Shown: piece by piece, positions 5,137 through 7,080 of the stretch
Layout of the letters: the number at the start of each line of letters is the position of its first letter
Position numbering within the stretch: the stretch's first letter is position 1
NCBI RefSeq assembly: GCF_006345805.1
Contig: NW_021828499.1
Span: forward strand, 1-8,111
DNA: 8,111 nucleotides
Direction of reading: 5' to 3'
From: Octopus sinensis
Lineage: Eukaryota
Made by a program: the position numbers and the translations under genes
Notes under the pieces: generated by a model
Databases searched by the model: none
What the model was told of the DNA's origin: nothing
Seen by the model: only the letters and a program-made list of their open reading frames with translations

Positions 5137-5692
5137 ATAAATGCCCTGATGCAGTACCAGGCAGTGGCTCTCATCATGTTTCTGATCTTAACTGATTGGA
5201 AGTGTTTCATGTACATTGTTTTGTCTTGGTATAAAGATGGGCTAAAGCAATATTCTGCTCAATACCACAGATTTGTCTGTCAGTTGTTTGACCTAACCAG
5301 TTGAGCATGTCCCTTAGTGGCTGACGATATGTGCATCTCTGATCACGAGCAGAAGTAGTGGGGGAGCATCATAGCCATGTGTTGAGAGGGATTCTTTGGG
5401 GTTTGAATAGTTCACCTCTGGAAACATGGTGGTTCTTTCACATCCTTAACACCCCTTATTCAGGGACCTTTTGAGCGGGATGGGCTACTCAACCTGAAGA
5501 AAATTCTAACTGGGCCCCCACTGCAAGGTCATGTGCTGTTTATCTTGATATGAGATCACATGTCGCGCACATATGTTGTGATGCATTGCCTGGTGGTACC
5601 CTTATCAGACGGGTAGTCATGATGGGTATATTGGGCTTCGTATATTTTACCCCAGTGTCACTTTGATGGCATGCACTGCTCTCTCTCACTCA
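5137..5692 (+). mobile_element. ~555 bp non-coding dispersed repeat ending in a (TAA)n tail (left copy); probably a non-autonomous retroposon
   Basis: A second copy is present at 6531-7080. I find no long ORF on either strand. The sequence ends ctctcactca(taa)n and resembles a high-copy Octopus repeat from memory. Strand is assigned from the tail only. Confidence 0.65.
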
Positions 5693-5850
5693 TAATAATA
5701 ATAATAATCATAATAATAATAATAATAATAAGCGAAGAAGAAGAAGAAGAAGAAGAAGGCGGAGTAGGAGGAGGAGGAGGAGGAGAAGAAGAAGAAGAAG
5801 AAGAAGAAGAAGAAGAAGAAGAAGAAGAAGAAGAAGAAAAGAAGAAGAAG
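5693..5850. repeat. (TAA)n then (GAA)n with a (GGA)n interruption
   Basis: Directly visible; source of the poly-I/poly-E ORF. Confidence 0.96.
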
Positions 5851-6091
5851 AATATTTTTAAAAGGATTGACGTAACTCTTCACAAAGGTAAACAGTCAAG
5901 ACGAAGCGCGCGATTCGATTGTAAGATATTTTATTGGTTGAACGATATTTCGACATTAAGTCTGTCTTTGACAAGTTCAAAATAAGAAGTGATAAAAATT
6001 TAAAATTATAGAAATTTAAACGTAAAGTATGAATGAGAGCAACTAGCGTCCACACGTTGATGGAATGACATCATCAGTTTTTAAGTTACAA
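5851..6091 (-). mobile_element. Inner unit, left arm (~240 bp); possible Penelope-like terminal (pLTR) relic
   Basis: Inverted copy at 6153-6390 with about 8 substitutions and no indels. It carries a hammerhead-like motif plus AATAAA on the minus strand. No RT or GIY-YIG coding sequence is present, so the family call is inference. Confidence 0.35.
5938..5980 (-). ncRNA. Degenerate minimal hammerhead-like motif (left arm)
   Basis: TTGAAC-TTGTCAA-A-GACA-gacttaa-TGTC-GAAA-TATC-GTTCAA: a 6-bp stem I, 4-bp stem II, GAAA and a palindromic ATAT stem III. The core differs from CUGANGA at 3 of 7 positions. Confidence 0.25.
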
Positions 6092-6141
6092 CTTTAGAAC
6101 AAGCTGTTGATGGAATGACAACATCAGTTTTTAAGTTACAA
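6056..6141 (+). repeat. 36-bp direct repeat with 50-bp period at the palindrome centre
   Basis: gttgatggaatgac(a/t)catcagtttttaagttacaa at 6056-6091 and 6106-6141, with one mismatch. Confidence 0.95.
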
Positions 6142-6152
6142 TTTTATAAAAT

Positions 6153-6390
6153 TTGTAACTTAAAAACTGATGATGTCATTCCATCAACGTGTGGATGCTG
6201 GTTGCTCTCGTTAATACTTGACGTTTAAATTTCTATAATTTTGAATTTTTATCACTTCTTATTTTGAACTTGTCAAAGACAGACTTAATGTCGAAATATC
6301 GTTTAACTAATAAAATATCTTACAATCGAATCGCGCGCTTCGTCTTGACTGTTTACCTTTGTGAAGAGTTACGTCAATCCTTTTAAAAAT
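6153..6390 (+). mobile_element. Inner unit, right arm; possible Penelope-like terminal relic
   Basis: Inverted partner of 5851-6091. Confidence 0.35.
6264..6306 (+). ncRNA. Degenerate minimal hammerhead-like motif (right arm)
   Basis: Same architecture as 5938-5980. The stem I 3' strand is GTTTAA, so the C>T change retains a G-U pair. AATAAA follows at 6309-6314. Confidence 0.25.
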
Positions 6391-6486
6391 CTTCTTCTTC
6401 TTCTTCTTCTTCTTCTTCTTCTTCTTCTTCTTCTTCTTCTTCTTCTTCTTCTCTTCTCTTCTTCTCTTCTTCTTCTTCTTCTTCTT

Positions 6487-6517
<31 letters not shown>

Positions 6518-6530
6518 TTATTATTATTAT
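6391..6530. repeat. (CTT)n with CTCTT interruptions, then (TTA)n
   Basis: Directly visible; mirror image of 5693-5850. Confidence 0.96.
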
Positions 6531-7074
6531 TGAGTGAGAGAGCAGTGCATGCCATCAAGTGACACTGGGGTAAAATATACGAAGCCCAATATACCCTCAT
6601 GACTACCCGTCTGATAAGGGTACACCAGGCACATGCATCACAACCATATGTGCGCGACATGGTGATCTCATATCAAGATAAACAGCACATGACCTTGCAG
6701 GTGGGGCCCAGTTAGAATTTTCTTCAGGTTGAGTAGCCCATCCCGCTCAAACGGTCCCTGAATAAGGTTGTTTAAGGATGTTTGAAAGAACCACCCATGT
6801 TTCCAGAGGTGAACTATTCAAACCCCAAAGAATCCCTCTCAACACATGGCTATGATGCTCCCCACTACTTCTGCTCGTGATCAGAGATACATATCGTCAG
6901 CCACAAAGGACATGCTCGACTGGTTAAGGTCAAACAATGACAAGCAATCTGTGGTATTGAGCAGAATATTTGCTGTAGCCCATCTTTCATACCAAGACAA
7001 AACAATGTACATGATAACACTTCCAAGTTAAGATCATAAGCCATGAGAGCCACTGCCTGGTACTGCATCAGGGC

Positions 7075-7080
<6 letters not shown>
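6531..7080 (-). mobile_element. ~550 bp non-coding dispersed repeat (right copy), bounded by (TAA)n on both sides
   Basis: Inverted copy of 5137-5692, roughly 93-94% identical by eye, differing mostly by 1-3 bp indels. Confidence 0.65.

What the first reader, a model, noticed from the sequence alone, without database searches (positions are those of the whole stretch)
5137..7080. ~1.94 kb nested palindrome: ~950-bp arms built from four modules around a near-zero spacer
Seen: [550-bp repeat][(TAA)n][(GAA)n][240-bp unit] | hairpin | mirror image. Long, tight inverted repeats are unstable in genomes, yet this one has lasted long enough for the arms and microsatellites to diverge independently (a GGA interruption on the left only, CTCTT interruptions on the right only). 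Three models: (1) one fold-back duplication; (2) a palindromic core whose flanking TAA tracts were each hit independently by a TAA-targeting element, with orientation forced by microsatellite polarity, so the palindrome grows outward by targeted insertion; (3) an assembly artefact. Model 2 would be an unusual self-extending palindrome mechanism, and is inference.
Basis: partly seen in the sequence, partly recalled or inferred. Interest (0 to 1): 0.72.

Follow-up and report, generated by a model that had tools for sequence, protein, structure and literature searches.

The report
Diverged 1.9-kb palindrome in octopus DNA
A stretch of octopus junk DNA holds a 1.9-kb mirror-image duplication whose arms each carry a common mobile repeat, two simple-sequence runs and about 290 bases of other DNA; it most likely arose in one copying accident a few million years ago, not as a palindrome that extends itself.

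Summary
The palindrome is real in the sequence. It spans 5137-7080, its symmetry axis is at 6146|6147, and it has no unique spacer.

The window is octopus DNA: SINE-derived peptides hit only Octopus bimaculoides proteins. About 59 kb of fetched O. bimaculoides DNA holds one independent copy of the "550-bp" module. That copy is 85% identical and ends in ...CACTC(AAT)12. It has no (GAA)n and no inner unit after it. So the outer module is an interspersed, TAA-tailed, SINE-like repeat, and a whole arm is not one mobile unit.

The two arm copies are sisters: 51 substitutions are shared against the outgroup. They also share a 14-nt leader that the outgroup lacks. Substitution divergence is similar in the outer module (2.2%) and the inner module (3.7%). 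This favours one DNA-level fold-back duplication, about 3-5 My old.

An excess of 1-bp indels is confined to the multi-copy module and looks like unpolished long-read consensus noise.

A pure assembly artefact is unlikely but cannot be tested without reads. This is an ordinary kind of event and of modest interest.

The parts
4803..5126 (+). Context: SINE2 copy (4803-5050) with its own (ATC)4(ATT)22 tail (5051-5126). This tail is the left outer microsatellite.
   Evidence: 20 blastn hits in octopus loci. Other copies also end in (ATC)n(ATT)n. TRF.
5129..5136 (+). 8-mer TGCAGTAC in the left flank. It repeats the 8-mer at 5150-5157 inside the arm. Unexplained.
   Evidence: Local alignment with shuffle test, p about 0.02.
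5137..5150 (+). 14-nt leader ATAAATGCCCTGAT at the outer end of the left arm. It is shared with the right arm (7067-7080) but absent from the O. bimaculoides copy.
   Evidence: Three-way alignments.
5151..5691 (+). Left copy of an interspersed, TAA-tailed, SINE-like repeat (the '550-bp' module).
   Evidence: 85% identity to L002:20037-19516. nhmmer E=1e-195.
5692..5852 (+). Left compound A-rich tail microsatellite: (TAA)13, then (GAA)40 with a GGA block at about 5758-5785.
   Evidence: TRF; sequence.
5853..6148 (+). Left inner unit. It includes a 50-bp tandem duplication (6056-6099 and 6106-6149) found in this arm only.
6140..6153 (.). Symmetry axis: the perfect 14-bp AT-only palindrome AATTTTA|TAAAATT, centred at 6146|6147.
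6149..6391 (-). Right inner unit. It differs from the left inner unit by 9 substitutions and no small indel.
6390..6530 (-). Right compound microsatellite: (TCT)43 with CTCTT interruptions, then (TTA)5.
   Evidence: TRF; sequence.
6531..7066 (-). Right copy of the TAA-tailed repeat.
7067..7080 (-). Right copy of the 14-nt leader. Its last 4 nt (TTAT, 7077-7080) are in phase with the adjoining (TTA)n tract, which makes a possible microhomology junction.
   Evidence: Sequence. TRF starts the tract at 7077.
7077..7111 (-). Right outer microsatellite: (TAA)12 on the minus strand. It is probably the tail of the neighbouring LINE-like remnant.
   Evidence: TRF; position next to the 7140-7886 frame.
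7140..7886 (-). Context: a degenerate 249-codon frame with 12 stops and no frameshift, carrying a zinc-knuckle-like motif. Read by eye as the C-terminal remnant of a LINE ORF2.
   Evidence: No database support.

Best explanation
This is a genuine interstitial inverted duplication (a quasi-palindrome) in TE-rich, microsatellite-rich octopus DNA.

The ancestral segment was about 1 kb. It held one copy of an abundant TAA-tailed SINE-like retroposon, that copy's A-rich tail (since grown into a compound (TAA)n(GAA)n microsatellite), and about 290 bp of downstream DNA.

This segment was copied once, in reverse, at the DNA level. The proposed steps are:
1. A break or a stalled fork occurred at an AT-rich short palindrome.
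2. The 3' end folded back and primed synthesis on its own strand.
3. About 1 kb was copied.
4. The new end was joined to the other side at a (TTA)n tract through 4 nt of microhomology.

The left-arm-only 50-bp tandem repeat beside the axis is either a second template slip in the same event or a later one.

Since then the arms have decayed independently. Substitution divergence is about 2-4%, which is roughly 3-5 My on the published octopus TE clock. That decay, the differing microsatellites and the loop of about 50 nt lower the hairpin-forming potential, which would explain the persistence of the palindrome.

No function is implied.

Shown: the anatomy, the TE nature of the outer module, the sister relationship of the arms, and the equal substitution divergence of the modules. 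Inferred: the fold-back mechanism, which arm is the original (weak preference for the left), and the age.
For: - All four modules are collinear in both arms, and the axis has zero spacer.
- The window is octopus. SINE peptides hit O. bimaculoides proteins at 85-94% identity, and SINE1 and SINE2 give 37 and 20 hits in the fetched loci.
- The outer module exists on its own in O. bimaculoides, at L002:20037-19516. That copy is 85% identical and ends in ...CACTC(AAT)12, with no (GAA)n and no inner unit after it. A whole arm is therefore not one mobile unit.
- The left and right copies share 51 substitutions against that outgroup, plus a 14-nt leader the outgroup lacks.
- Substitution divergence is 12/538 in the outer module and 9/243 in the inner module; Fisher p=0.24.
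- The left copy has no TAA tract on its outer side.
- The left outer (ATT)n is the SINE2 copy's own tail.
- The right outer junction overlaps the (TTA)n phase by 4 nt.
- The inner arms differ by 9 substitutions (6 transitions) and no indel. The microsatellite interruptions differ between arms. Both argue against a technical copy.
- Literature: short inverted repeats of 5-9 bp with a 3-12 bp spacer can seed fold-back duplications. Shorter arms, lower arm identity and longer spacers all stabilise palindromes; a 52-bp spacer abolished fork stalling in eukaryotic cells (PMC7999016). Double-strand breaks induce fold-back inverted duplications (PMC10622511).
Against: - Only one outgroup copy of the repeat could be fetched, from 59 kb of octopus DNA. 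The family's true 5' end and its age spectrum are therefore unknown. If the consensus starts with ATAAATGCCCTGAT and a young subfamily exists, the shared outer boundary and the high identity would no longer discriminate between models.
- The outer module shows 22 small indels against 12 substitutions, while the inner module shows none (p=3e-4). I attribute this heterogeneity to unpolished consensus in a multi-copy repeat, but that was not tested with reads.
- No orthologous empty or single-arm site was seen.
- A 4-nt microhomology in AT-rich DNA is weak evidence.
Confidence: 0.6

Rival explanations
1. Foldback-type mobile element. The whole 1.94-kb palindrome, or the inner core of about 2 x 290 bp, is a non-autonomous DNA transposon with very long terminal inverted repeats. 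It would have captured a SINE copy and then inserted between a SINE2 tail and a LINE tail.
For: - The axis has zero spacer and the arms are long and contain repeats, as in FB, Galileo or Tetris elements (PMC4168063 and PMC4079207, listed).
- The flanks are (ATT)n and (TTA)n of the same polarity.
- A 2-bp AT or TA at both ends could be a target-site duplication.
Against: - The 550-bp module occurs alone, with its own TAA tail, in O. bimaculoides.
- No copy of the inner unit was found in 59 kb, although this is weak: the upper bound is about 1.4e5 copies.
- The 2-bp 'duplication' is itself palindromic and cannot be told apart from the arm.
- There is no terminal motif of a known superfamily and no coding capacity.
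Confidence: 0.1
2. A pre-existing core palindrome, [(TAA)n(GAA)n-inner | inner'-(TTC)n(TTA)n], was hit twice, independently, by a TAA-targeting retroposon. The microsatellite polarity fixed the orientation of each insertion, so the palindrome grew outward.
For: - The 550-bp module is an interspersed repeat with a (TAA)n tail.
- The right copy has TAA repeats on both sides.
- Dong elements target (TAA)n, including in a snail (PMC3812793).
- Dong-R4 is the LINE group with the most recent insertions in O. vulgaris (PMC13282606).
- The outer and inner modules differ in indel spectrum.
Against: - The left copy has no TAA tract on its outer side.
- Both copies start at the same base and share the same 14-nt leader.
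- The two copies are 97.8% alike by substitutions, against about 85-88% to the only other copy seen.
- Three other (TAA)n or (ATT)n tracts in the window are unoccupied by this repeat.
- The repeat's 3' end shows no similarity to the adjacent LINE remnant (p=0.55).
- The model needs two hits at mirror-image positions.
Confidence: 0.07
3. Assembly artefact. A palindromic chimeric long read (missed adapter or fold-back read), or a repeat-induced misjoin, created the inverted copy.
For: - Such read artefacts are known (PMC6977585; PMC6218980).
- The axis has zero spacer.
- The outer module carries 22 mostly 1-bp, deletion-biased indels against the outgroup. This shows the assembly has unpolished long-read noise here.
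- The right arm exits into a different flank exactly at a repeat and microsatellite boundary.
Against: - The inner arms differ by 9 substitutions (6 transitions) and no indels.
- The left arm has a (GGA)7 block and 13 TAA units, while the right arm has CTCTT interruptions and 5 units.
- A 50-bp duplication is present in one arm only. Two passes over one molecule, then polished, should converge rather than differ in this way.
- The flanks beyond the arms are unrelated, so this is not an inverted haplotig.
Confidence: 0.1

Closest known systems
Fold-back (palindromic) inverted duplications formed by fold-back priming or template switching at short inverted repeats (yeast, human CNVs, tumours)
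   Same: The arms are adjacent and inverted around a short AT-rich palindromic seed, with no spacer. One outer junction carries a few bases of microhomology. There is small extra templated or duplicated sequence beside the axis.
   Different: This case is only about 1 kb per arm, is interstitial, is fixed in an assembly and is millions of years old. The described cases are mostly large, recent and often terminal, or are triplications. The ancestral state was not observed here.
Closely spaced inverted Alu/SINE pairs
   Same: Two copies of a SINE-like retroposon lie in inverted orientation with hairpin potential. Such pairs are known fragile sites when close together and highly similar (PMC7999016).
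   Different: Inverted Alu pairs arise from two independent insertions and have unrelated DNA between them. Here the DNA between the copies is itself palindromic, and the copies are sisters.
Foldback transposons (Drosophila FB, Galileo, Tetris)
   Same: Long inverted arms that contain internal tandem repeats, with little or no middle region.
   Different: The outer module is an independent retroposon family. No family of copies, no target-site duplication and no superfamily termini were shown.
Microsatellite-targeting non-LTR retrotransposons (Dong: TAA; Koshi: TTC)
   Same: The outer module has a (TAA)n tail. The right copy sits inside TAA repeats next to a TAA-tailed LINE-like remnant. Dong-R4 is active in octopus.
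   Different: The module is non-coding. It shows no 3' similarity to the adjacent LINE remnant. The left copy and the O. bimaculoides copy are not flanked by TAA repeats on the 5' side.

Membership tests
Fold-back inverted duplication | Two arms collinear in inverted orientation across all modules | tested here: met
   Global arm alignment. BLAST gives 93% over 559 nt and 96% over 242 nt.
Fold-back inverted duplication | Axis at a short inverted repeat, with no spacer or one of only a few bp | tested here: met
   A perfect 14-bp palindrome at 6140-6153 and no unique spacer.
Fold-back inverted duplication | Arm copies are sisters relative to other copies of any repeat they contain | tested here: met
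   51 substitutions shared by the left and right copies against the O. bimaculoides copy. Only one outgroup was available.
Fold-back inverted duplication | A novel outer junction with microhomology or a blunt join | tested here: inconclusive
   A 4-nt TTAT overlap with the (TTA)n phase at 7077-7080. This is weak evidence in AT-rich DNA.
Fold-back inverted duplication | Single-arm ancestral state at the orthologous locus | not testable with these tools
   No octopus genome can be searched by DNA with these tools. Only 59 kb was fetched, through two proteins.
Foldback transposon | Multiple genomic copies with the same termini | tested here: inconclusive
   No copy of the inner unit in 59 kb of O. 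bimaculoides DNA. The sample is too small to decide.
Foldback transposon | Each arm behaves as one unit of the element | tested here: not met
   The outer module occurs alone, with its own (AAT)12 tail and without (GAA)n or the inner unit, at L002:20037-19516.
Foldback transposon | Target-site duplication | tested here: inconclusive
   Only a 2-bp AT or TA is possible. It is self-complementary and cannot be told apart from the arm ends.
TAA-targeting retroposon (Dong-dependent) | (TAA)n at the 3' end of every copy | tested here: met
   Both arms and the L002 copy end in ...CACTC followed by (TAA/AAT)n.
TAA-targeting retroposon (Dong-dependent) | TAA repeats on both sides of each insertion | tested here: not met
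   Met for the right copy only. The left copy is preceded by ...TTAATTGCAGTAC, and the L002 copy by SINE1-like sequence.
TAA-targeting retroposon (Dong-dependent) | 3' end shared with a partner LINE | tested here: not met
   No similarity to the adjacent LINE-like remnant (p=0.55). Other LINEs were not available.
Palindromic long-read chimera | Arms differ only by random read errors | tested here: not met
   The inner unit has 9 substitutions (6 transitions) and no indels. The microsatellite interruptions differ. A 50-bp duplication is in one arm only.
Palindromic long-read chimera | No independent reads span the structure | not testable with these tools
   No read data are available.

The most novel reading that the evidence does not exclude
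The palindrome grew outward. A core palindrome flanked by mirror-image (TAA)n tracts was hit on each side by a Dong-mobilised, TAA-targeting SINE. The orientation of each insertion was dictated by microsatellite polarity. If so, target-specific retroposition can lengthen a palindrome symmetrically.
Probability: 0.06. Interest if true: 0.7.

Novelty: new member of a known kind. Interest (0 to 1): 0.25.

Why it matters
If it is real, this is a natural example of a kilobase-scale, zero-spacer quasi-palindrome that has survived for millions of years in an animal germ line. That makes it useful for asking how much arm divergence, microsatellite asymmetry and a central loop of about 50 nt are needed to tame such a structure.

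It also flags two practical points for octopus genomics. First, a TAA-tailed, roughly 540-bp SINE-like family may be composite with the tRNA-derived SINE. Second, this assembly carries local, deletion-biased 1-bp consensus errors inside multi-copy repeats.

It does not reveal a new mechanism.

Tried and rejected
External searches that found nothing:
- Exact look-up of 10 window ORFs.
- A composite peptide query from both modules against 5.8 billion proteins.
- A peptide query from the LINE-like frame.
- Exact DNA patterns from the 550-bp module, the inner unit and SINE1 in metagenome contigs, genome contigs and viral contigs.
- A SINE sequence string in papers.

- Rfam gave only sub-threshold miRNA-like hits on hairpins and microsatellites.
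- ARAGORN found no tRNA.
- Pfam found nothing in the LINE-like or mariner-like frames.
- Look-ups of five further octopus proteins were not on record, and their clusters had no other members. Octopus DNA was therefore limited to L001 and L002.

Ideas rejected:
- The 550 module as the 3' end of the adjacent LINE. No similarity (p=0.55).
- The arms' first 30 nt as homologous to the SINE1 3' region. Not significant (p=0.55).
- Snap-back reverse transcription of the retroposon's own RNA. That would give a head-to-head palindrome at the element's 5' end. Here the copies lie tail to tail with non-element DNA at the axis.
- An inverted haplotig join. The flanks beyond the arms are unrelated.
- A 3-bp TTA/TAA (Harbinger-type) target-site duplication. 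The flanking triplets are reverse complements of each other, not direct repeats.
- The sigma-70 promoter and terminator scan is irrelevant for a eukaryote.
- The 670-nt 'perfect' inverted repeat in L002 is an N-run and (AT)n artefact.
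Full report
**Observation**

The window contains a 1,944-bp quasi-palindrome at 5137-7080. Read from the outside in, each arm has four modules.

| Module | Left arm | Right arm (mirror image) |
|---|---|---|
| about 550-bp unit | 5137-5691 | 6531-7080 |
| (TAA)n | 13 units, 5692-5731 | 5 units, 6516-6530 |
| (GAA)n | about 40 units, 5734-5852 | about 43 units, 6390-6516 |
| inner unit | 5853-6148 | 6149-6391 |

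BLAST of one arm against the window gives 93% identity over 559 nt for the outer unit and 96% over 242 nt for the inner unit. Chance is excluded.

The axis is the perfect 14-bp palindrome AATTTTA|TAAAATT at 6140-6153, with no unique spacer.

A GGC/GGA block at about 5758-5785 occurs only in the left arm. CTCTT interruptions at about 6449-6468 occur only in the right arm.

One feature was missed. The left arm alone carries a 50-bp tandem duplication beside the axis (6056-6099 and 6106-6149, 93% identical). The right arm matches the distal copy over 36/36 nt and the proximal copy over 35/36 nt. The best single-strand DNA fold therefore pairs the right arm with the distal copy and leaves a loop of about 50 nt (-267 kcal/mol, z = -46).

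**Boundaries and surroundings**

The palindrome ends sharply at 5137 and 7080. Both flanks carry T-rich ATT/TTA repeats of the same polarity on the + strand (5062-5126 and 7077-7111). These tracts are therefore not part of the palindrome.

The left tract is the (ATC)n(ATT)n tail of a SINE ('SINE2', 4803-5050). Other copies of that SINE in octopus DNA end the same way.

The right tract reads as (TAA)12 on the minus strand. It follows, after about 30-60 nt, a 249-codon minus-strand frame at 7140-7886. That frame has 12 in-frame stops, no frameshift and a CX2(C>S)X8HX4C-like motif. I read it as the C-terminal remnant of a LINE ORF2. That reading is by eye only: Pfam and the protein search found nothing.

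**Source organism**

Peptides translated from the two SINE types in the window hit eight proteins. Every hit that carries a name is from Octopus bimaculoides, at 63-94% identity over the SINE-derived stretch, mostly 85-94%.

Two of those proteins gave access to 44.8 kb and 24.9 kb of the O. bimaculoides genome, as L001 and L002, of which 58.6 kb is non-N. SINE1 and SINE2 from the window have 37 and 20 blastn hits there.

The window is therefore from an octopus. The species was not determined. The gap-free long microsatellites suggest a long-read assembly.

**What the modules are**

L002 holds one independent copy of the outer module at 20037-19516 (minus strand). It is 85% identical over module positions 15-549 (nhmmer E=1e-195).

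- That copy ends at the same ...CACTGCTCTCTCACTC and is followed by (AAT)12.
- No (GAA)n and no inner unit follow it.

The outer module is therefore an interspersed repeat with a (TAA)n 3' tail, i.e. a SINE-like retroposon. One copy in 58.6 kb scales to roughly 1e3-2.6e5 copies (95% Poisson interval) for an assumed genome size of 2.7 Gb.

A whole arm is not one conserved mobile unit.

Upstream, the L002 copy runs straight out of a SINE1-like sequence at ...GTGCTTCAGCA|GTACCAGG, and no SINE1 remainder appears after the tail. The family may therefore be a composite of SINE1 and this module.

Homology between the arms and L002 begins at GCAGTACC (5151 in the left arm, 7066 in the right arm). The 14 nt outside that point, ATAAATGCCCTGAT, are shared by both arms but not by L002.

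The compound (TAA)n(GAA)n tract fits the known birth of A-rich trinucleotide repeats from retroposon tails (PMC3812793).

The inner unit has no other copy in the window or in the 58.6 kb. That is only a weak bound.

**Differences between the arms**

| Module | Substitutions | Small indels |
|---|---|---|
| Inner unit | 9 (6 transitions) | 0 |
| Outer module | 12 | 22, mostly 1 bp |

If indels fell in proportion to length, none of 22 landing in the inner unit has p=3e-4.

The differences were polarised with the L002 copy. The long branch to L002 has 51 substitutions and 4 indel events. The two arm branches together carry the 22 indels. Of the 18 that could be polarised, 14 are deletions and 4 are insertions, split about evenly between the arms. 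Comparing the two spectra gives Fisher p=9e-9.

The neighbouring LINE-like frame has no frameshift in 747 bp, so the indel excess is local. The simplest reading is residual, deletion-biased long-read consensus error that short-read polishing could not fix, because this module is multi-copy. This is inference and was not tested with reads.

On substitutions alone the outer module (2.2%) and the inner module (3.7%) do not differ (Fisher p=0.24).

The published octopus TE scale equates JC 0.065 with about 18 My and JC 0.09 with about 25 My (PMC13282606). On that scale the arms are roughly 3-5 My old. This is a rough figure.

**Weighing the models**

*Model 1, one DNA-level inverted duplication.* This explains:
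- the collinearity of all modules;
- the zero-spacer axis at a short AT palindrome;
- the sister relationship of the two repeat copies;
- their identical outer end, including 14 nt that another family member lacks;
- the equal substitution age of the modules.

The right outer junction overlaps the (TTA)n phase by 4 nt (TTAT, 7077-7080). The left arm holds 14 nt (CTTTAGAACAAGCT, 6093-6105/6) that the right arm lacks. Both observations weakly suggest that the left arm is the original and the right arm the copy.

A plausible path is a break or stalled fork, fold-back priming, about 1 kb of synthesis, and joining at the (TTA)n tract. The 50-bp repeat would be an extra template slip. Fold-back priming at short inverted repeats and break-induced inverted duplications are documented (PMC7999016; PMC10622511). 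These mechanistic steps are inferred, not shown.

*Model 2, two independent TAA-targeted insertions.* The premise is credible:
- Dong elements target (TAA)n, including in a snail.
- Dong-R4 has the most recent insertions among O. vulgaris LINEs.
- The module is TAA-tailed, and the right copy lies between TAA tracts.

The locus, however, argues against it:
- The left copy has no outer TAA tract.
- Both copies start at the same base with the same leader.
- They are far closer to each other than to the only other copy seen.
- Three other TAA/ATT tracts in the window are unoccupied by this repeat.
- No 3' similarity links the module to the adjacent LINE remnant (p=0.55).

*Model 3, artefact.* Palindromic chimeric reads exist, and this assembly is locally noisy. 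But transition-rich substitutions without indels in the inner unit, different microsatellite interruptions, and a one-arm 50-bp duplication are not what two passes over one molecule would give. The flanks are unrelated, so an inverted haplotig join is also out. The model remains untested without reads.

*A fourth model, a foldback-type transposon.* This is weakened because the outer module is an independent family. It is not excluded, since so little octopus DNA could be searched.

**Persistence**

Palindromes are more recombinogenic with longer arms, higher arm identity and shorter spacers. A 52-bp spacer abolished fork stalling at inverted Alus in eukaryotic cells (PMC7999016).

Here three things all reduce hairpin or cruciform formation: 2-4% arm divergence, non-matching microsatellite interruptions and lengths, and a loop of about 50 nt in the preferred fold. 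That is a sufficient, though inferred, explanation for survival.

**Verdict**

The structure is most likely a real, old, single fold-back duplication of a segment containing a TAA-tailed SINE-like repeat. It is a new example of a known kind of rearrangement, not a self-extending palindrome.

Confidence is limited by having a single outgroup copy and no read data.

Noticed in passing
window 1978-2400 (minus strand): A tRNA-derived SINE ('SINE1'). It has an A/B-box-like head near 2395 and a (TAAAAGAG)n tail, seen as TACTCTTT x3.5 on the + strand. It gave 37 blastn hits in 59 kb of O. bimaculoides DNA. Peptides from it revealed that the window is octopus DNA.
   Followed up: partly
window 4803-5126 (+) and 2490-2640 (-); L001/L002: A second SINE ('SINE2') with an (ATC)n(ATT)n 3' tail. 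ATT repeats or another SINE2 often lie directly upstream of it, which suggests tandem or microsatellite-associated insertion.
   Followed up: partly
window 4698-4803: (AAT)28 switches directly to (ATT)7. This microsatellite polarity switch is itself a small inverted repeat, lying just upstream of SINE2.
   Followed up: no
window 7140-7886 (minus strand): A 249-codon frame with 12 in-frame stops, no frameshift and a zinc-knuckle-like motif, followed by (TAA)12. It is probably an old LINE ORF2 C-terminal remnant, possibly Dong-R4-like. There is no database support.
   Followed up: partly
window 1150-1620 (minus strand): An ORF-like stretch that by eye resembles the N-terminal helix-turn-helix region of a mariner-type transposase. 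Pfam found nothing.
   Followed up: partly
L002:20235-19480 (minus strand): In O. bimaculoides, the copy of the 550-bp module continues directly from a SINE1-like sequence at ...GTGCTTCAGCA|GTACCAGG, and no SINE1 remainder follows its tail. This may be a composite SINE1 + 540-bp + (TAA)n element.
   Followed up: partly
window 5129-5136 and 5150-5157: The 8-mer TGCAGTAC abuts the left arm from outside and recurs 14 nt into the arm, exactly where homology to the O. bimaculoides copy begins (p about 0.02). It may be a 5'-junction stutter. Unexplained.
   Followed up: partly
window 5137-5691 and 6531-7080: 22 small, deletion-biased indels separate the two copies of a multi-copy repeat, while adjacent low-copy DNA has none. 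This is probably unpolished long-read consensus error in this assembly.
   Followed up: partly
whole window: About a quarter of the 8.1 kb is simple-sequence repeat: (GAA)24, (GTAT)51, (CT)93, (TCTA)70, (AT)92, (AAT)28 and others. Several tracts contain phase-breaking 1-bp interruptions.
   Followed up: no
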